A stretch of 63,226 nt of DNA, counting the filler, from Bigelowiella natans CCMP2755 (Eukaryota > Protista > Cercozoa): assembly GCA_000320545.1 (NCBI GenBank). It is 6 parts of 6 records of this genome, joined end to end, with 100 filler letters (N's around TTAATTAATTAA, not from the genome) between each part and the next. Parts side by side here need not be neighbours in the genome. Positions count along the whole stretch, not along the records: positions 1 to 18,163 come from ADNK01001317.1; 5 more parts are not named here. The stretch is one strand, 5' to 3'. Of this stretch, positions 504 through 18,163 are shown piece by piece (positions within the stretch are counted from its first letter, which is position 1; each line of letters starts with the position of its first letter). Under the pieces are notes generated by a model that did no database searches, was not told the origin of the DNA, and worked only from the letters and a program-made list of their open reading frames with translations. The position numbers and the translations under genes are program-made.

Positions 504-754
504 GCAGCACCAAAGGAAATAGCATTCATCCACGTGTTGGAGAGATCAGATATCTTGTCGAGTAGACGCAGTGGAACGTTGTACCTGGACAAAAGGTTAA
601 TAAACTATAGGTCATATCTCACGTCGTGACTTTAAACAAAGAGGAGGAGGAGGAGGAGAAGGGGGGGGGGGGGGGGGAGGGGTTGTTGAAAACATAAGCA
701 TCATACCCCTTACACCAATCTATGGGGATGAGTACATGCATTGATATACAATAT

Positions 755-786
<32 letters not shown>

Positions 787-1753
787 ATTATCAAACGCGC
801 TGGTAACAACATCAAAACCCTCTCGCAAACGGTGACGTGATACGAGTTAGAAACTTACACATCAATATCCGAGTTGTATGCTTTTGTTTCCATCTCAGCG
901 ACAAGGCTCCACGCTCTTTCCCTGCAGAAGAAGAAGAAGAAGAAAATGTTTGTTAAGTGTGATAAAGCTGCTACGTACGAAGAAGGACACCGCAGGTAGC
1001 ATCTGCTACTCTTCCATCGATTGGTCAAGGTGCTCGAGGAGGAGGAGGAGGAGGAGAAGAAGGAGGAGGAGTGCAGAGGATGATAAGTAAAAAACCACTT
1101 CTCCGCCTCTCTTCCTCCTCCTCCTACAACAACGATAACCTAATAATGGTAACAGGCTTGCTAGCTGCTGCTACTACTACTACTACTACTACCATGAACT
1201 TGAGCTCCGCATGGCCTTAATGGCGCTTATATAAGTAGAACGCCCAAGATTGAGGTTGTGCTTCCGCATGAACTTGACCATCTTCCAAGCCTGGTGCCCC
1301 TCGGCTCCTTGGGAGCAGCACGCCAGCACCCCATTGCAAGTGCCGGTGTCGGGCATTACCTGAAGAACGACGTGTTACCAAAAAATAGCATCATGGCCAT
1401 TATCAACCACAGCAACCACCGAAATGCATGGTGATGATGATGACGATGATGATGATAATGAAGATGATGGTGAAGTGGAAGGAGGAGGAGCGCACTTTAT
1501 CCTGAAGCATAGCTGACAGCAATTCAATTCCCTTTTCCCAAGTCTTAGTCTTGACGCATGCATGTATAGCGGCGTTGTAGGTTGTCAGCGACGGGATGAA
1601 TCGCTTCTCCGCCATTTGCGAGTGGAGGGCTAAGACTTTGTCATCATGCTTGCTCACATGATACACCGCAATGGCGGAATCATAAATAGCTGGGTCAAGT
1701 TTTACATCTGGGTTATTTGTGGCCTCAAGGAAGAGTTGGTGTACCTAGAGAGA

Positions 1754-8605: not shown

Positions 8606-10152
8606 ACTCTCTCTCTCGCTCCCCTTTCTCCCCATCCCCCTTATTCAGGAACCGCTCACATCCTAAATGTGACTTCGCAGCAGTGGCTTGATGAAACCAA
8701 GGCGGTAGGTCCAAACGGCGCCCTTTGGACACATCAAGTCGCAGTTGTTGTTCCCAAGAATGTCCGTATCCGCAACGTCTCCGTCGCTGTCATGACAGGA
8801 GGGTGCAACGAGGACCCAGCTCCGCCCACATTCAAGGACGAATACCTCGCACTTGCCGACAACCTTGCCTATCAGACCGGCGGTATAGCTGTTGTCATCT
8901 ACCAGATCCCCAACTGCCATATCGTGTACCCGTCCGACCCCAGCAAAACTCCGCGCGAAGAGGACGCAATGATTGCCTGGGCCTGGCACGAATTTCTCAC
9001 TGACCCAAAACACGACCCCGAGTGGCTCCCCCGGCTACCGATGGCCAAAGCTGGGATGCAATGCATGCGTGCAGTGGAGGAATACACCAAGAAGCAGGGC
9101 ATCGCAGAGATCGAGGGATGGGTAGTTTCTGGTGCCTCCAAGCGCGGGTGGACCACTTGGATGGTCGGTGCTGTGACTTGCGAGAGCTGTCCTACGATTG
9201 TCGGGATCGCACCCCTCGTTCCTATAGTACCAGCGCTTCACCAGGACGTGCATAGGCAATGGAAGAGTTACGGCGGGTTTACGTTCGCGTTCAAAGACTA
9301 CACTGCCGTGAACCTGACCACGAATCTAGACGGTGATGGTTTCAAATTGATGATGGATATCGTAGACCCGATCAATTATGGAGAGCGCCTTGCCCGTCTC
9401 CCAAAGGTACAGCCTCCTTACACCTCTTATTTCAGATTATACTCCCTTCCAATCTTGTAATCCCCTGTACAAATGTTTTAACTGAACGTCTCCTTTACTC
9501 ACAGTTGACCGTGCTCTCATCCGATGACGAGTTCATGCAGTTCGATTGGTCGAACATCTGGTATGACCAGATGACGGGAGAAAGCAACCTCCTTATCATT
9601 CCAAACTCCGAGCACTCGCTCACCACCGGGATCCCCGAGATCATATCGAGTCTACCAGCTGTCTACAAGTCCATCGCGCTCCAGAAGGAACGACCAAGTT
9701 TCGACTACGCCTACGACAACACCACTGGGGAGATTACGGTGACAATCCCAGAGGGCATCGAGCACGGGAAAGTTGTCCTGCGCCATGCCATGACCTTGCA
9801 AAACAAGCGCCGGGACTTCAGGTGGGTGCGCCTCGCAAACGAAGACACCGGAAACTGCACTCTGCCAGACATCCCAATGAAAAAGCCCATTGAGGGTGGC
9901 AACTGTATCCAGCCAATAATCTGGCTTGGCAAAACGCTCAGTGCCGTGGAAGGTACGACCAACGTGTACAAGGCGAAGCCTCCTATGCCTCTGCCCGGAT
10001 TCTGGACGGGATACTATATCGAAGTCTTCTTCCCAAACAACCTCGGGCTCAAGAAGGATTCGTTTCAGTTCACCACCCCAGGCTTTGTGTGGCCAGACAC
10101 GTTGCCGTTTGAGGACTGCCTCGCAGATACATGCAAAGGGCACCTCGTATAA
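8379..10152 (+). CDS. Secreted PqaA (PhoPQ-activated pathogenicity-related) / Dictyostelium AprA-like protein, 3 exons
   Basis: Signal peptide, then TPLDDYVNKPD, LNVTSQQWL, PNCHIVY..EDAMIAWAW, LPMAKA, VSGASKRGWTTW, IVDP, DDEF, PNSEH. Introns at about 8518-8648 and 9407-9504. Confidence 0.88.
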
Positions 10153-10787
10153 TCTTACGGCTGTGCATTTATGAGGGCTGTTTGGGCTGTTTGGGCTGAT
10201 GCAACCTTTGCCGGAAAACTCCTGCTTCATATTACGGCGGAATGGATGCCGCGGCATGTGTGTATACCTCACGGCAGCCGTATACCCACGTGAGCATTTT
10301 CATTTTGTCGGGCAGAAATTATTCCAATCGAGAGCTAGCTAAAATGCTTTGTATTAATCGTTACATTTTACTGCTTATATGCAATGTTGTAGTAGTACGT
10401 ACGTACACAGTTGTCCTTTTCATTACTGTATGCTCGTTCGCTGTTTAATAATAGCTTGATATGCTAGCATGGTGTCTGACATGTGCGTCATGTGTTGGAT
10501 GCCTGTGCATACATGTCTCTTTGTACCATTAGTGTGGAGCGCTGCTAGGCTAACATGGACTTTGATGTCTCTATTCGTGCACATAGTGATGTATCAAGTT
10601 ATAAAGTGAACAAATCTTTTCAATATTAGTCATCCTGATCCGATGTAGCTATGTGTCTAGATGTGCAAAGCAGCGGCTACAGTGCTTATAGGTCTCAGGA
10701 CATGTCCATTTCTGGATTTATTTGTCTCGCATCGTCCGGCCATCATGTGTTTCATGCACATTTGAATAAATCATCTGCTGTAGTATA

Positions 10788-11398
10788 TGTGGTCAGTTTG
10801 CGACCACCAAATGCATGTAAGCGCGCATGTACATGCATAGCATAAATGGTAGTGCATGCTGTGCTTTATTATATCTTACATTTGCATGTGAGCATGTTTA
10901 TATAGGTTCAGGCTATCGTTCCTGTGCCTTAGTTAGTCATATAGGGGCATGTAACGTGAGTTACATGCCCGGAAATACAGTTATAGGAGGGGGCACGTGC
11001 AACTGGGAACATCCTTCTCGGTTGTTTCCCCAACCGTGGATGTTCCTAGGAGCACCCTCGGTATTTTACTTACGACATGGAGTCGGCCTACGTATTGTAA
11101 TATTATAGGGGAAAATGGCCTACATTTTCCCTAATATTTTGGGCAACTGCTGCTGCGTAGCATGTTGCTGCTGGGGACGCTGTGTGCCCAGCACATGATG
11201 TGTATTGGCGCGCAACGCGCTAGTTTAGCACACTCTAAAAGACCCGCAAGCAAGCGGTAAGCTTTCTCCTTTGGTAGTTTGCTCATGCATGCTCATGTCA
11301 TGTTATCTATTCAACAGGGTTTTAGTTTTGTGGATTTAAAGCATTGTAAAAGCATACATTGCACAGTTGTGTTGTTAGCGCTGCGCAATACAACTACA
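10788..11398 (+). repeat. 5' LTR (611 bp) of element 1
   Basis: Begins TGTGGT and ends ACTACA (imperfect terminal inverted repeat). Repeated from 17036. Confidence 0.93.
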
Positions 11399-11399
11399 C

Positions 11400-11410
11400 T
11401 GGTAGCGGAC
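11400..11410 (+). promoter_or_regulatory. Primer-binding site, probably initiator tRNA-Met
   Basis: TGGTAGCGGAC lies 1 nt after the LTR. TGG is the complement of CCA, and the sequence resembles the iMet PBS TGGTAGCAGAG. Confidence 0.75.
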
Positions 11411-11425
11411 GAACTACGTTGAACT

Positions 11426-14400
11426 ATGGATCAAGGGAACTTATTTGGGTCTCAGGAGGAGACAAGTGACCATGTTGGGGAAGCTGAGGGCAAAGGGACC
11501 GAGATAGGAAATTCGGAAGTTTCGACGGGAGGCTATGGGCTTCGGGATGGCATCCCGGTGGCTCAGCCCGTGGCTTCTGAGCGAAAGTATAAGCTTGGAA
11601 CGGGCGCCCGGTCTTCCCTGACTATGGAGGAAGTTCTGGAGCAGTTTGGGGACTTAGGTGTTTACGATGCCCGAAGAGTTGCAAAATTTGTTTTGCACTG
11701 CGACGGGATCGATAAGGGCGTTGATAACTTGGTTAAAATGGTAGCTAATGACCCAGAGTCCAGAGAGTTTGTATTTTATCGTTGTGTGGATAAAGGGGTA
11801 ACTGTACGTACTTGGGCCTACATGCTCAAGAAGTGTAGGGACCCGGATTATGCTCCGCCAGGCATGGCGGAGCCGATGGAGCGGAAGGCTAGGCTGCAGC
11901 CTTCGGTCAGGGATATTACGGGTGCTATCGATTCGTTTCGACGGCACTGCCCTATTAAAGGCAAGCTGTGTGTGGCTACTATGAGCCCGGCACAGTTCCG
12001 TAGGAAAGCTCGTGGGCTTTATAATGAAATTAAAGCACACGCTGCTCTGGTCGGTCAAGCCGACTTGGGGTTTGGTTATAAATATTTCCAGACGTGCTTA
12101 TCCTCTCATACGCTTGAGAGGCTACGTCGGGAAGCAGTAAGGAACCGGTATGCCTCCGAGAGCCCGGAGGACCAGTTTGAAATGGCCCTGGAGCATCTCT
12201 GCGATGAGGAGGATAAGGAAAAGCTTCAGCGGGACTTCGAGGATAAGCTCGACTTTCTCCGGCGGAAGCGGTATCATTACGTGGACGTGATACACCGGCA
12301 GTTTAGCGAGCTTCTTCTAGAGTTTGCTGGGCTACGTTTTAGTCATACTAACAAGCTGCGATACTTCCGGCGCTTGTTGGTAGGGCATCGGTTATATGAT
12401 AGGTTCATCGCGCCACTCAACGGGTTTCGCCCGTATGATGTGGATGAGCTTGTTAAGTTCTTGAGGCCACTGGAGGAGAGCTATTATAAATTTACGGCTC
12501 ACCCTCTCCATGCTAATGCCTCTACGGTTACAGGACCCGCTGTGCAACGCGAATGCGTGCATTTTAAGCGCGGGAAGTGTAAATATGGCGATAAGTGCAA
12601 ATTTTTGCATATCAAGCAAAATGTACAAAGTAAGAAGGTTTCTAAGAAGTATACGCCTGAGCAACTTTCTAGGATGAAAACCCAGGACTGTAGGCTTTTC
12701 CAGAAAGGTAAATGCCATTATGGAGATAAGTGTAAGTTTCTCCATAATGCTGGGAGTTTAAAACCTGTTGGAGGGGCACCTGTCGGTTTAGCCTCTCATA
12801 CCTGTGAGGAATCAGCCGATGCTCCCAAGCAGAATATGGAAGCATCGCTCCTACAGGTTAATTCCCAGTCACTTCCTAACTTAATAAAGGAAAGTGAGCG
12901 TCGTCACTACGAACGAGACCCAAGTTTGAGGTCTCGGAAGAAAGTTAAATGCTTCCTGCAGGCGGATGACGGCGCCGTTGCAGTACTTGGATTAATCGAC
13001 GATGGCGCTCAACCTACTACCATTTCAGAGGCTCTATACCAAAAGTTAAAGTCCTCTGGTGTTAGGTTTGGATATAGGCCGATGGTAGGTGAGGTGGGTG
13101 GCCTTAATTCATCGATTAAAAATAAAATTCTGCGGGAGGTCGATTTTACCGTCCAGATTAAAAAATACAAGAAGCATGGAGCATATGTTAAACTCCGTAT
13201 TTGTGCTCTGGTATTATCTGGACCGGTCTCGCAGGACTTCGTATTGGGAATAGGTACCCTTAACATGAATGGCATTAATTCTGTTAAGGATCCTGACCCT
13301 GTAAAGCGAGTTGTCACCATTAATGGTGAAATCGTAAATTCATACCCCTGCAGCGTCGACGTGCTTTCGGCGACTGTCGTTACAGTTATGGGGATGGATA
13401 TGCCTCCGATGGCGGCAGCTCCCGGCGAGATTTGTAGTATGGATACAAATGCCGTGGGAGAATTGCCGGGGGAGGAGGAGGTGTCGTCTGTAGTTCGAAA
13501 AGAACTACGTAATACAGTGGATCATGATTTCGTAAATAATCATGATGATATAATTAAAGCACAGGATTTGCCTGATATCGATGTTAAATCGATGGCAAAT
13601 CCCATCGAATCTGATGGAGTGCTTCTCCAGCGGTTATCCAGTATTGTACCGTTGTCGGAGTTTGGCGACCAGCGTGAGGTTGCTAACTCAGACTTGGTAA
13701 GCGGGCACGTGCTGGACATGCTTGATCGCCTGGAGCGCGAGATGGTTACGAAGGAGAGCTTGCTGCCTGGTTTACAGCAATTCTATTATCTTCGTACTAT
13801 CATATGCCGCTTCCGGAAGTATTTTGTGATAAAACTACCGGAGGTGGGCAAGTATAAATTACGGGAACCGCATGATATTAAGCGATGGCTGAAGCCGGGC
13901 TGCAAGCCGGTTCGCCAGCGGCCTTATCATTTGGAGCCGAATAAACTTAAGCTTATGAAGCTCAAGCTCGACCAAATGGTAAGTGATGGGTTATGTTATA
14001 AGGTAACAAATAATACTTCAGAGTGGGCGTCGCCAGCTTTCTGTGTATATGACAAAGGAAAAGCATTACCACGCGTCGTGGTGGCGATGGGCCGCCTGAA
14101 TAAGCTCGTGGAGCTTATGTATGCTGTTTGCCCTGTAACTCGGGATACAGTAAGAAAATTAATGAATGCTCAATGGGTTATAGTCTCTGATAGTAAAGCT
14201 GCATGGAGACAGCTTGGTATGACCGAGTTTACAAAATTGGTATTTGTATTCGTTACTCTTTTCGCGTCATTCGCGAGCGAGGGCCTACCGATGGGGTACA
14301 AGAATGCTCCTCAAGTATGGGTCGAGGAAATGGCTACAAGGTTCCTTGTTGGGATACCAGATACTGTTATGCACTTCGACGACTTCTTTACTATAGGCCA

Positions 14401-16863
14401 GTCGCCGATGCAAGCGCTTGTAGGTTTCGCTAAATTTATGCAACAGTGTGAAAAATATAACAATTATCAAAGTGCTACTAAATTGCATATTTTTCCAAAG
14501 CGACTTGCGGCAGTAGGTTTGATCAAGGAGGCGAAGACGCACTACCCAGATCCTAAGCGTACGATTGCTATAGACAAGCTAGAGCGTCCAATAAAGGGGA
14601 GGCGGTTCTTAAAGCATGTGCGCCGTCTTATTGGTTTATTCATTTATTATTTGGAATACATGAAAGGCTTCTGGCAGATCGCTGCGCCAATCAAGGATTT
14701 GCTTATGCAGGGAGCTGCTCAAGTATGGACGGATAAGCATGATAAAGCTTTGGATACATTAAAAGGCATGCTAAAGAAGGCGGTATTGTATGTGCCTGAT
14801 TATGAAGCTATATCTATAAGCCAACCCTTCATCCTTGACACTGACGCGTCTGATGTTGCGGGAGGTGCTACGCTTTCCCAGGTAATTGGAGGGAGCGAGC
14901 GTTTACTGGCTTGCTACTCGTTCGCTTGGAAAACGAACGAGAGAAGCTGGCATATTGTACGTAAAGAGCTTACGGCTGGGGCGAAGGGGCTTTACAGGTT
15001 CCAGCATATTACGAAAGGCTGCCCGATTTTGATTCGCATGGATGCGAAAACGGCTCGTTATTTCGCTCTCCATGGAATGGATAAAATGCAGCTGCCTTAT
15101 ACAAGATTAAGTGCAGCATACTCTGGATATCCGCTGGTGGATATCCAATATAGAAAGGGGGAAAAGCACACTAATGTGGACCCTTTCTCGCGGCCAGACG
15201 CCGACGAAACGCGCGACGAAAGAAAGTCGCATCGTCAGTCGTTGGCCTCTCTTTTCCCGATGCATGCGGAGGCGGCGAAGCAGGAGGAAAAGCTGGTGGA
15301 GTCTGTAGCTTCTCTCTCCTCTTGCTTAGCTAATGAGACGATGATTGACTATAATGTCCCTCATCTCTCTGTTTATTCTGTAGAGTTACAGCCTTGGGCG
15401 TGCTGTGCTACAGAGGTCCAGATATCGACGACGCTGTCTAATATTAATTTGGAGCAGCAGCGTCCCGATTTTAAGAAAATTATCGATGCTCTCGAGGACG
15501 AGAAGAATGCTAATCATCTTCTCGTTTCCTCTAAATATAAAATAGCTTCTGGTAAGCTATATCACATGGGCTCCTTCCAAATTGGAGGAGATATACCGCT
15601 GCAACTCTGTGTACCTTCTGATAAACGCCAGGAGGTGTTGCAGGCGTATCATGTGGATAATATGGCGAATCATCGTAATGCTGATGATCTCGCAAAGAAG
15701 ATTCTACGCGGCTATTACTGGGTTGGAGTCCAGAAAGCCTGCCGTAGATTTGTAAGGCAGTGTCAGGTCTGCATACGTACTAAAACGCGTATGAAGCAGG
15801 CGCCTTACTTACAGCATGGCGACCGGGAAATTAATGGCACGATTGCAGTGGATACAATCGGCCCTGTCGACGGCGCTAAGCATTACATACAGACGCTCTG
15901 CGTTATGGCTATTGGTTATATATATACAAGGGCGGTGAAGCGTATTAGCTCAGCGCGTACGGCGGATTTTATCATGTCGTATATACTAAAACACGGATGC
16001 CCAAAGCAAATTATTATTGACCAAGGGCCAGAGAACGTGGGTAAAATTATGCAGCATTTACAAAATCGGCTGCGGCTTAAATTTATCAAGATATCTGCTA
16101 AAAATAGCCAGGGAAACTCAGTATTAGAGCGGAAGCATCGACCTATTAATAATGGGATTATGGCGATGCTCTGCAAAATGTTGAGGATCGGCACAACTGG
16201 CATAAATATTTGGAGATGATAACATTTAGTGTGAATACCACAATCGATAAGTGTGGTTATTCCCCGGCTCACCTCATGTTCGGATATCAGCCAAAGTTCG
16301 TGGCTGATATGGAGAGCAAGTCGGTGGCGGCTCCAGGGACCGGGGACCTCGATAAGAGGATCCAAGATCTGGAAAAGATGCGGCTGTTGTATGCTACTAT
16401 GAAAGAGGATTATAAATTAGTGAAAAATTTCACGAGGAACGAGAAGCTTAATACTCAAGACGAATATAAAGTAGGGGATATGGTGTGGCTTTTCCGCAAG
16501 GAAAATCGTAAAGAAAATGCTGTTACGAAAAAATATGAAATTAAAAAGACTGGCCCTGTGACTATCGTGGCCAGGAGTAGCAGATCCCATACCTATCAAA
16601 TTATTGACCCGAAAACGGGGTATAATAATAATGTACACGCGAAATATCTTTCGCCTTATGGTACATTTACCCCGTTACCAGAAGTGCGCCCGGTAGCTCC
16701 AGATGTAGAGGAGAAATTTGCTGCCGACGAGAATGAGGCTTCGGATGGTTCCTCAGACTCGTCGGATTCCCAGGGGCCTTCTGGTAACCGAATTTCGCGG
16801 GATAACATCGTCCGGGGTAAACGTAATAGGAGACCGGCGGATATAGGTCCGTATATTTCGTAG
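11426..16863 (+). CDS. Gag-Pol polyprotein of element 1 with one frameshift at about 16175-16178
   Basis: 1597-aa ORF with two CCCH fingers, protease LIDDGA, RT (EWASPAFCV, LPMGYKNAP, HFDD), RNase H (LDTDASD), integrase HHCC and D-D-E (VDT, IDQG, LERK). The integrase continues in another frame (NWHKYLEMITFSVNT..GYSPAHLMFG..GPVTI) to 16863. Confidence 0.93.
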
Positions 16864-17020
16864 ATTTTGTATTTTCGCAAATATATGCTACGGTATAACT
16901 ATGTGTCTAGATGTGCAAAGCTGGTGCAAAATTTTTCTTTTCTTCCCTTTTCTTCTAATTTTCTTTTATTTGTCTCGCATCGTCCGGTGTTGTTATTATT
17001 GAGTTAGGGGTGCAAAAATT

Positions 17021-17035
17021 GGGGGGGGGGGGTAG
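17021..17035 (+). promoter_or_regulatory. Polypurine tract of element 1
   Basis: G12 followed by TAG immediately before the TG of the 3' LTR. Confidence 0.85.
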
Positions 17036-17630
17036 TGTGGTCAGTTTGCGACCACCAAATGCATGTAAGCGCGCATGTACATGCATAGCATAAATGGTAG
17101 TGCATGCTGTGCTTTATTATATCTTACATTTGCATGTGAGCATGTTTATATAGGTTCAGGCTATCGTTCCTGTGCCTTAGTTAGTCATATAGGGGCATGT
17201 AACGTGAGTTACATGCCCGGAAATACAGTTATAGGAGGGGGCACGTGCAACTGGGAACATCCTTCTCGGTTGTTTCCCCAACCGTGGATGTTCCTAGGAG
17301 CACCCTCGGTATTTTACTTACGACATGGAGTCGGCCTACGTATTGTAATATTATAGGGGAAAATGGCCTACATTTTCCCTAATATTTTGGGCAACTGCTG
17401 CTGCGTAGCATGTTGCTGCTGGGGACGCTGTGTGCCCAGCACATGATGTGTATTGGCGCGCAACGCGCTAGTTTAGCACACTCTAAAAGACCCGCAAGCA
17501 AGCGGTAAGCTTTCTCCTTTGGTAGTTTGCTCATGCATGCTCATGTCATGTTATCTATTCAACAGGGTTTTAGTTTTGTGGATTTAAAGCATTGTAAAAG
17601 CATACATTGCACAGTTGTGTTGTTAGCGCG
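17036..17630 (+). repeat. 3' LTR of element 1 (terminal bases missing)
   Basis: Matches 10788 onward up to GTTGTTAGCGC, then fuses to a further LTR copy. Confidence 0.92.
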
Positions 17631-18163
17631 CAGTTTGCGACCACCAAATGCATGTAAGCGCGCATGTACATGCATAGCATAAATGGTAGTGCATGCTGTG
17701 CTTTATTATATCTTACATTTGCATGTGAGCATGTTTATATAGGTTCAGGCTATCGTTCCTGTGCCTTAGTTAGTCATATAGGGGCATGTAACGTGAGTTA
17801 CATGCCCGGAAATACAGTTATAGGAGGGGGCACGTGCAACTGGGAACATCCTTCTCGGTTGTTTCCCCAACCGTGGATGTTCCTAGGAGCACCCTCGGTA
17901 TTTTACTTACGACATGGAGTCGGCCTACGTATTGTAATATTATAGGGGAAAATGGCCTACATTTTCCCTAATATTTTGGGCAACTGCTGCTGCGTAGCAT
18001 GTTGCTGCTGGGGACGCTGTGTGCCCAGCACATGATGTGTATTGGCGCGCAACGCGCTAGTTTAGCACACTCTAAAAGACCCGCAAGCAAGCGGTAAGCT
18101 TTCTCCTTTGGTAGTTTGCTCATGCATGCTCATGTCATGTTATCTATTCAACAGGGTTTTAGT
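17631..18163 (+). repeat. Third, tandem LTR copy lacking the first 6 nt and truncated by the gap
   Basis: Restarts at CAGTTTGCGACCACC; 589-bp period shown by the identical 93-aa ORFs at 17075 and 17664. Confidence 0.85.

What the first reader, a model, noticed from the sequence alone, without database searches (positions are those of the whole stretch)
10641..17035. LTR retrotransposon whose 3' UTR carries two 23-nt boxes identical to its own upstream target DNA, in register
Seen: CTATGTGTCTAGATGTGCAAAGC occurs in the host flank (10649-10671) and inside the element (16899-16921), extendable 8 nt 5' with three A/G mismatches. TTTATTTGTCTCGCATCGTCCGG occurs at 10717-10739 and 16965-16987. Box 2 is followed by exactly 48 nt before the LTR TG in both places (10788 and 17036), and box1-box2 spacing is 68 vs 66. 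The sequence between and after the boxes is unrelated: the element has a T/C tract and a G12 PPT, while the flank has no PPT, so the flank is not an ordinary element 3' end. Established: Gypsy internal sequence does not normally match flanking DNA outside the LTR/TSD. Inference, four alternatives. (a) The element RNA or cDNA carries target-matching guide segments that position integration. (b) The boxes are protein-binding or promoter motifs recognised both in the host target and in the element, allowing self-targeting and tandem arrays. (c) The flank is a relic of a related element with conserved cis boxes. (d) The consensus is an assembly chimera from reads anchored on the identical LTRs, which would also give in-register matches.
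Basis: partly seen in the sequence, partly recalled or inferred. Interest (0 to 1): 0.88.

Follow-up and report, generated by a model that had tools for sequence, protein, structure and literature searches.

The report
Likely assembly mosaic in retrotransposon copy
The two boxes are really in the assembled sequence, but only in this one copy of a young Ty3/Gypsy-type retrotransposon, as two short patches copied from its own upstream flank, so they are most likely a consensus error at identical LTRs and not a targeting device.

Summary
Both 23-nt boxes, the 48-nt distance to the LTR and the 68/66 spacing are as described, and chance cannot explain them.

The interpretation mostly fails:
- **Private to one copy.** Five sister copies in the same genome, with LTRs 99.8-100% identical, carry a standard 3' UTR without either box. 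So do more distant relatives. Apart from a one-base gap in pol, the two patches (16892-16921, 16966-16987) are this copy's only private differences.
- **Unique in the genome.** Each box occurs only at these two places in 91 Mb.
- **Source is the flank.** The flank belongs to a very abundant ~115-nt dispersed repeat, and the box sequences are native to it.
- **No parallel elsewhere.** No other copy resembles its own flank.

This rejects guide segments, a shared target motif and conserved element boxes.

The pattern is four switches with 0-1 nt of microhomology, one isolated flank-type base, and register held by the LTR. It sits beside an unsupported LTR-LTR joint at a contig end. That fits a consensus built partly from misplaced flank-LTR reads (about 0.75). 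A real ectopic conversion remains possible (about 0.17).

Public-run contigs show only the standard form, but they drop minor variants, so raw reads are still needed. The element itself is an ordinary insertion with a 5-bp GTATA target duplication.

The parts
8669..10152 (+). Host gene upstream of the insertion: two exons (8669-9460, 9505-10152) of a PhoPQ-activated pathogenicity-related protein homologue (PF10142)
   Evidence: E 2e-57 for profile positions 32-264 and 1.4e-15 for positions 267-367. The two ORFs are colinear on the profile.
10586..10726 (+). Copy of an abundant ~115-nt dispersed repeat. It contains flank box 1 and the start of box 2, and is the native source of the box sequences.
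   Evidence: Model R1 scores 75.5 bits here. The own-genome search gave 17,730 first-look candidates, and the listed matches reach E 7e-18 or better.
10649..10671 (+). Box 1, flank copy
10717..10739 (+). Box 2, flank copy
10783..10787 (+). 5' copy of the 5-bp target-site duplication GTATA. The 3' copy follows the LTR end on the next contig, C2419.
   Evidence: in L039 the LTR end is followed by GTATA
10788..11398 (+). 5' LTR, 611 nt, TG..CA
   Evidence: 611-nt match to the 3' LTRs of sister copies
11400..11411 (+). Putative primer-binding site starting TGG, one base after the LTR
   Evidence: Read from the sequence. No tRNA match was tested.
11426..16219 (+). gag-pol ORF of 1597 aa: two CCCH zinc fingers, reverse transcriptase, RNase H, integrase H2C2 finger
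16210..16863 (+). Rest of pol (integrase C-terminal part) in another frame. The frame is split by a one-base gap near 16170 relative to four sister copies.
16892..16921 (+). Patch 1: the only stretch here that differs from the family's standard 3' UTR. It carries box 1 plus an isolated flank-type base at 16892, and is 2 nt longer than the stretch it replaces.
16966..16987 (+). Patch 2: carries box 2 and is 2 nt shorter than the stretch it replaces
17004..17033 (+). Polypurine tract region ending in G12, identical to sister copies
17036..17629 (+). 3' LTR, positions 1-594 of 611
17631..18163 (+). Third, partial LTR (positions 7-539) running to the contig end. No contig in four public runs supports the joint at 17629/17631.

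Best explanation
The element is an ordinary, very young Ty3/Gypsy-type LTR retrotransposon. It inserted, with a 5-bp GTATA duplication, into a copy of an abundant short dispersed repeat downstream of a host gene. The two boxes in its 3' UTR are not part of the element family. They are two short patches (30 and 22 nt) in which this one assembled copy carries the sequence of its own 5' flank instead of the family's standard 3' UTR. Most likely they were created when the consensus was built. Reads covering flank plus 5' LTR were also laid on the 3' UTR plus 3' LTR junction, because the 611-nt LTRs are identical and lie only 6.2 kb apart. The LTR anchor held the two read sets in register. The consensus then took the flank reads' letters in two short stretches. 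Shown: the patches are private to this copy, they come from the flank, and they are kept in register by the LTR. Inferred: that the step which produced them was assembly and not biology.
For: (1) Five sister copies with LTRs 99.8-100% identical (C2603, C236 twice, C2972, C2337) share one standard 3' UTR without the boxes. Relatives with LTRs about 85-87% identical have that same type. (2) Across about 6.8 kb the window copy's only private differences are a one-base gap near 16170 and the two patches. (3) The boxes occur nowhere else in 91 Mb. Related members of the flank's dispersed repeat carry similar sequence at the same positions, so the letters are native to the flank. (4) The four switch points have 0-1 nt of microhomology. 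One isolated flank-type base (16892) lies 7 nt outside patch 1. The patches are +2 and -2 nt, so total length is unchanged. A column-wise consensus of two aligned read sets produces this naturally; a polymerase or end-joining event does not. (5) The region is visibly troubled in the assembly. The contig ends 1.1 kb further on inside an LTR. An LTR(594)/LTR(7) joint is bridged by no contig in four runs. The next contig starts inside the same LTR. (6) Seventeen runs from nine studies hold 0.71 of the sampled 31-mers of 16600-17035, and an eighteenth holds 0.68. The share of 31-mers common to the standard copies is 0.724. In four runs the single contig over 16310-17063 is the standard form at every patch position.
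Against: No raw read was seen. Only Logan contigs were available, and these drop minor variants. A base at 16645 carried by two of six assembled copies is also invisible in them. A real single-locus variant would therefore be missed, and point (6) is weak. The assembly method is unknown to me. Alternation between standard and flank letters four times in 150 nt is unusual even for a consensus error. The exact restoration of total length could be coincidence either way.
Confidence: 0.75

Rival explanations
1. The mosaic is real. After insertion, the 5' LTR and 3' LTR of this copy paired out of register. This could be unequal sister or intra-element pairing, the same pairing that yields solo LTRs and LTR-to-LTR gene conversion. 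The exchange ran past the LTR edge into unlike sequence, and patchy repair or repeated template switching copied two short stretches of flank into the 3' UTR.
For: Intra-element LTR gene conversion is common, with tracts of 100-1000 bp (PMC7251063). The LTRs are identical. The locus may have undergone other rearrangement: the LTR-LTR joint at 17629/17631 and a solo LTR of another family inside the last LTR. Register held by the LTR is expected under this model too.
Against: The 48 nt next to the LTR, including the polypurine tract, are standard, so the tract is not continuous from the homologous region. There are four switches with 0-1 nt of microhomology in sequence only about 30% alike, where a heteroduplex cannot form. 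The copy shows no private substitution, so little time has passed since insertion. No run shows it, though that test is weak.
Confidence: 0.17
2. The flank is the relic 3' end of a related element that shared cis-acting boxes with this family.
For: The flank is repetitive DNA, and weak similarity extends around box 1 (72% over 95 nt).
Against: The family's own 3' UTR, in close and distant copies, lacks both boxes. Other copies of the flank repeat are not followed by an LTR or a polypurine tract. The exact 23-mers are unique to this locus. Shared ancestry would give family-wide rather than private identity.
Confidence: 0.03
3. The boxes are a protein-binding or promoter motif recognised both in the target and in the element, directing insertion 48 nt downstream.
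For: A related LTR (L041) also sits inside a copy of the same dispersed repeat.
Against: That insertion lies at a different position in the repeat. About 20 other insertion flanks lack the boxes and mostly lack the repeat. The boxes are unique in the genome. The repeat is so abundant that two hits among about 30 flanks is not clearly an excess.
Confidence: 0.03
4. The element RNA or cDNA carries target-matching guide segments that position integration.
For: Only the in-register identity in this one copy.
Against: Sister copies at different sites all carry the same standard 3' UTR, with no identity to their own flanks. The longest shared strings are 7-9 nt, equal to cross-copy controls. The standard form is ancestral.
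Confidence: 0.01

Closest known systems
Ty3/Gypsy (Metaviridae) LTR retrotransposons
   Same: 611-nt LTRs with TG..CA ends, a 5-bp target duplication, a TGG-starting site after the 5' LTR, a G-rich polypurine tract before the 3' LTR, and RT, RNase H and integrase in that order.
   Different: Gag carries two CCCH-type zinc fingers instead of the usual CCHC knuckle. Pfam did not detect the integrase core or a protease. None of this relates to the boxes.
Consensus mosaics at identical repeats in draft assemblies (misplaced reads anchored in a repeat copy)
   Same: The changes are private to one copy, exactly in register with the repeat edge, lack junction microhomology, and lie next to a contig end and an unsupported joint. 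This comparison rests on general knowledge of assemblers, not on a test here.
   Different: Four alternations within 150 nt is more than the usual single switch. The assembler and read type are unknown to me.
Intra-element gene conversion and unequal recombination between LTRs (PMC7251063)
   Same: It needs the same out-of-register pairing of the two identical LTRs of one element.
   Different: Known tracts lie inside the homologous LTRs. Here the changed stretches lie outside the LTR, in unlike sequence, and are separated from it by 48 unchanged bases.
Site-specific LTR elements such as yeast Ty3 or Dictyostelium DGLT-A (targeting of Pol III genes through protein contacts)
   Same: Insertion next to a repeated short genomic element might suggest targeting.
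   Different: No tRNA or Rfam RNA lies at the site. Insertion positions differ between copies. Those systems carry no target-matching sequence inside the element. This comparison is recalled from the literature, not tested.

Membership tests
Ty3/Gypsy LTR retrotransposon | Two direct LTRs with TG..CA ends | tested here: met
   10788-11398 and 17036-17629 are 100% identical over 594 nt. The full 611-nt length is defined by sister copies.
Ty3/Gypsy LTR retrotransposon | Target-site duplication of 4-6 bp | tested here: met
   GTATA lies before the 5' LTR (10783-10787) and after the LTR end on contig C2419. Sister copy C2337 has TAACG.
Ty3/Gypsy LTR retrotransposon | pol domain order RT, RNase H, integrase | tested here: met
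   RVT_1 at aa 904-1029 (weak, below the Pfam cut-off), RT_RNaseH_2 at 1101-1202 (1.6e-17) and Integrase_H2C2 at 1396-1455 (1.3e-12). The rve core was not detected.
Ty3/Gypsy LTR retrotransposon | Primer-binding site and polypurine tract next to the LTRs | tested here: inconclusive
   A polypurine tract ending in G12 is present. The TGG-starting site after the LTR was read from the sequence, but no complementary tRNA was sought.
Element with target-matching guide segments | Each copy's 3' UTR matches its own 5' flank | tested here: not met
   For four of the five other full copies the longest shared string is 7-9 nt, equal to cross-copy controls. C236a shares 14 nt, but its flank is a related LTR element that shows 13-17 nt with every copy's 3' UTR. 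Only the window copy has 23 nt.
Motif-directed integration | The same boxes at a fixed distance upstream of every insertion | tested here: not met
   The boxes are unique in the genome, and the flanks of about 20 other LTR copies lack them.
Assembly or consensus chimera | Individual reads lack the boxes at one of the two places | tested here: inconclusive
   Contigs of four runs show only the standard 3' UTR, and no run among the 18 that hold the stretch has the patch-spanning words. Contigs drop minor variants, and no raw reads were available.
Assembly or consensus chimera | The change is private to one assembled copy, in register with an identical repeat, near other assembly trouble | tested here: met
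   contig end, unsupported LTR-LTR joint, and a next contig that starts inside the same LTR.

The most novel reading that the evidence does not exclude
The mosaic is real DNA. In one very young copy, two short stretches of the 5' flank were written into the 3' UTR at the matching distance from the LTR, while the polypurine tract was left intact. This would show that out-of-register pairing of an element's two LTRs can carry sequence exchange tens of bases into wholly unlike DNA, in patches. It would be an undescribed way for an element to pick up host sequence.
Probability: 0.15. Interest if true: 0.5.

Novelty: not a real feature. Interest (0 to 1): 0.1.

Why it matters
If the boxes had been a family feature, they would have pointed to sequence-guided integration of an LTR retrotransposon, which would be remarkable. 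The family comparison shows they are not. They are private to one assembled copy and taken from that copy's own flank. The practical lesson is that any flank-to-interior identity in a repeat should first be compared with sister copies. Only the small remaining chance that the patches are real DNA has biological interest, as an odd conversion event running beyond the LTR edge.

Tried and rejected
- **Relic of a full element upstream:** the upstream 10.8 kb shows no coding similarity to the element (blastn and tblastx), and a host gene lies there.
- **Small RNA or tRNA gene as target:** no Rfam hit at E up to 1 in 10300-10800 and no tRNA in the window.
- **Conserved structure of the flank repeat:** RNAalifold predicted no pairs on 28 copies.
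- **Independent sighting of the mosaic:** an exact 30-nt pattern across the right edge of patch 1 found nothing in the metagenome contigs. Two small ORFs spanning the patches are on record nowhere. All three blanks are uninformative.
- **Public runs:** only contigs were available, and they show the standard form only. Because contigs drop minor variants, this neither proves nor disproves the mosaic at the single locus.
- **Organism and 5' junction:** the organism's name and the assembly method could not be established with these tools.
Full report
**Observation**

- Box 1 lies at 10649-10671 and 16899-16921.
- Box 2 lies at 10717-10739 and 16965-16987.
- Each box 2 is followed by 48 nt before the LTR's TG, at 10788 and at 17036.
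- Box spacing is 68 versus 66.
- Box 1 extends 8 nt leftwards with three A/G mismatches.
- A G12 tract ends the 3' UTR.

Two exact 23-mers in register in 18 kb cannot be chance. In the whole 91-Mb genome each box, with up to two mismatches, occurs only at these two places.

**What the element is**

The ORF at 11426-16219 encodes two CCCH zinc fingers, a weak reverse-transcriptase match, RNase H and the integrase H2C2 finger, in the Ty3/Gypsy order. The ORF at 16210-16863 continues pol in another frame.

Sister copies show that the LTR is 611 nt (10788-11398, TG..CA). The window's 3' LTR stops at LTR position 594 (17629). It is joined through one base to position 7 of a third LTR, which runs to the contig end at 18163.

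The next contig in numbering, C2419, starts at LTR position 245. It carries a ~335-nt solo LTR of a different, very abundant family inserted after position 576. It then has the LTR end followed by GTATA. The 5' flank also ends in GTATA, so this is a genuine insertion with a 5-bp target duplication. A sister copy on C2337 has its own duplication, TAACG.

Upstream lies a host gene for a PhoPQ-related protein, in two exons on the same strand.

**The family comparison**

The own-genome search found at least 46 LTR matches. Five other copies with LTRs 99.8-100% identical retain the 3' UTR: C2603, C236 twice, C2972 and C2337. All five share one standard 3' UTR that has neither box, and it is only 83% identical to the window's. 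More distant relatives on C976 and C234, with LTRs about 85-87% identical, have the same standard type, so it is ancestral.

A multiple alignment of the window copy with its sisters shows very few private differences over about 6.8 kb. They are:
- a one-base gap near 16170, which splits pol;
- patch 1, at 16892-16921;
- patch 2, at 16966-16987.

Patch 1 is 2 nt longer and patch 2 is 2 nt shorter than what they replace, so the 3' UTR keeps its length. Between and after the patches the sequence is standard, including the polypurine tract.

**Where the patch letters come from**

The flank at 10586-10726 is a copy of a dispersed repeat of about 115 nt. A sequence model of it gave 17,730 first-look candidates in the genome, with listed matches at E 7e-18 or better. 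It also found 28 hits in the 165 kb I held.

Other members carry similar letters at the positions of box 1 and box 2. The boxes are therefore native to the flank and foreign to the element. Other members are only 73-85% like this flank, and the exact boxes are unique, so the patches derive from this very flank and not from the repeat family at large.

- **(a) Guide segments.** For five other full copies I compared 200 nt before the 5' LTR with 200 nt before the 3' LTR. The longest shared strings are 7-9 nt, the same as between unrelated copies. The exception is C236a, whose flank is itself a related LTR element. Only the window copy gives 23 nt. Rejected.
- **(b) Shared motif at a fixed distance upstream of insertions.** Rejected by the uniqueness of the boxes and by about 20 other flanks. 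One related LTR (L041) also sits in a copy of the dispersed repeat, but at another position. The repeat is so common that this is not clearly an excess.
- **(c) Relic of a related element with conserved boxes.** Rejected, because the family's own 3' UTR lacks them and the flank repeat is not followed by LTRs elsewhere.
- **No RNA gene at the site.** No tRNA or Rfam family lies there.

**Artefact or real event**

What remains is a transfer of two short stretches from the flank into the 3' UTR of one copy, held in register by the identical LTRs. The anatomy is as follows.
- There are four switch points with 0-1 nt of microhomology.
- One isolated flank-type base (16892) lies seven bases outside patch 1.
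- The 48 nt next to the LTR are untouched.
- The background identity between flank and standard UTR is about 30%.

A polymerase that switches templates, end joining, or heteroduplex repair would each need four unlikely steps in unlike sequence. A conversion tract spreading from the LTR should be continuous with it.

A column-wise or quality-weighted consensus of two read sets aligned through the LTR needs no homology at the switches and naturally keeps register. The two read sets would be true 3' UTR reads and misplaced flank-plus-LTR reads.

The two junctions lie 6.2 kb apart beside identical 611-nt repeats. The region also shows other assembly trouble: the contig ends in the LTR, the next contig starts inside it, and the LTR(594)/LTR(7) joint is not bridged. 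I therefore put about 0.75 on an assembly mosaic and about 0.17 on a real ectopic conversion. Intra-element LTR conversion itself is well known (PMC7251063).

**Read evidence and its limits**

Seventeen runs from nine studies hold 0.71 of the 34 sampled 31-mers of 16600-17035, and an eighteenth holds 0.68. None holds more. By my count 72.4% of all 31-mers in that stretch are shared with standard copies. The runs therefore hold the standard words and none of the patch-spanning ones.

In four runs from four studies, a single contig covers 16310-17063 (from 16585 in one run). It reads the standard form at every patch position, with 22 other letters and 6-7 gaps. Nothing bridges 17629/17631; contigs there continue into the normal LTR end.

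These are Logan contigs, which drop minor variants. A base at 16645 carried by two of six assembled copies is not seen either. A real one-in-six variant would be lost, so this is absence of support, not refutation. I could not tell whether any run is the assembly's source.

A metagenome pattern scan and two exact-protein look-ups were blank and uninformative.

**Verdict**

The functional readings are refuted by sister copies. The feature is most likely not real DNA. The element is an ordinary young Ty3/Gypsy-type insertion. Raw reads or a locus-specific PCR would settle the remainder.

Noticed in passing
window 10586-10726; also L002 1488-1999 (three copies), L049 5547-5853 and 7482-7583, L060 1379-1491: A dispersed repeat of about 115 nt is extremely abundant in this genome. 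The own-genome search gave 17,730 first-look candidates, with listed matches at E 7e-18 or better, and roughly one copy per 6-7 kb in the DNA I held. Copies often cluster. The most constant part can form a short hairpin by eye. There is no Rfam match, no poly-A tail and no terminal inverted repeat. Its nature (SINE, MITE or gene-end signal) is open.
   Followed up: partly
window 17629-17631: The 3' LTR, cut at position 594 of 611, is joined through one base to position 7 of another LTR. This resembles a trimmed LTR-LTR (circle-type) junction. No contig in four public runs bridges it, so it could be real or another assembly error.
   Followed up: partly
L039 (contig C2419) 333-665: A ~335-nt solo LTR of another family sits inside the last LTR of this locus. 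That family has 684 first-look candidates, with pairs spaced about 5.4 kb apart on several contigs.
   Followed up: partly
window about 16170: A one-base gap relative to four sister copies, within a two-base run, splits the pol frame between 16219 and 16210. It is either a real inactivating change or a consensus error.
   Followed up: partly
window 12545-12745: Gag carries two C-x7-C-x5-C-x3-H (CCCH) zinc fingers where LTR elements usually have CCHC knuckles.
   Followed up: partly
window 633-793 and 1860-2893: Long G runs (up to about 30 G) and CT, GT and AT microsatellites lie in the upstream intergenic DNA.
   Followed up: no
window 16600-17035 (runs X19, X20): Seawater metatranscriptomes hold 0.32 and 0.15 of the element's sampled words. 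The host or a relative is therefore marine, and the element or a relative may be transcribed there.
   Followed up: no
L047 (C236) 1-628 and L026: One sister copy is nested inside an older related LTR element and has no matching target duplication, which suggests recombination between copies.
   Followed up: no
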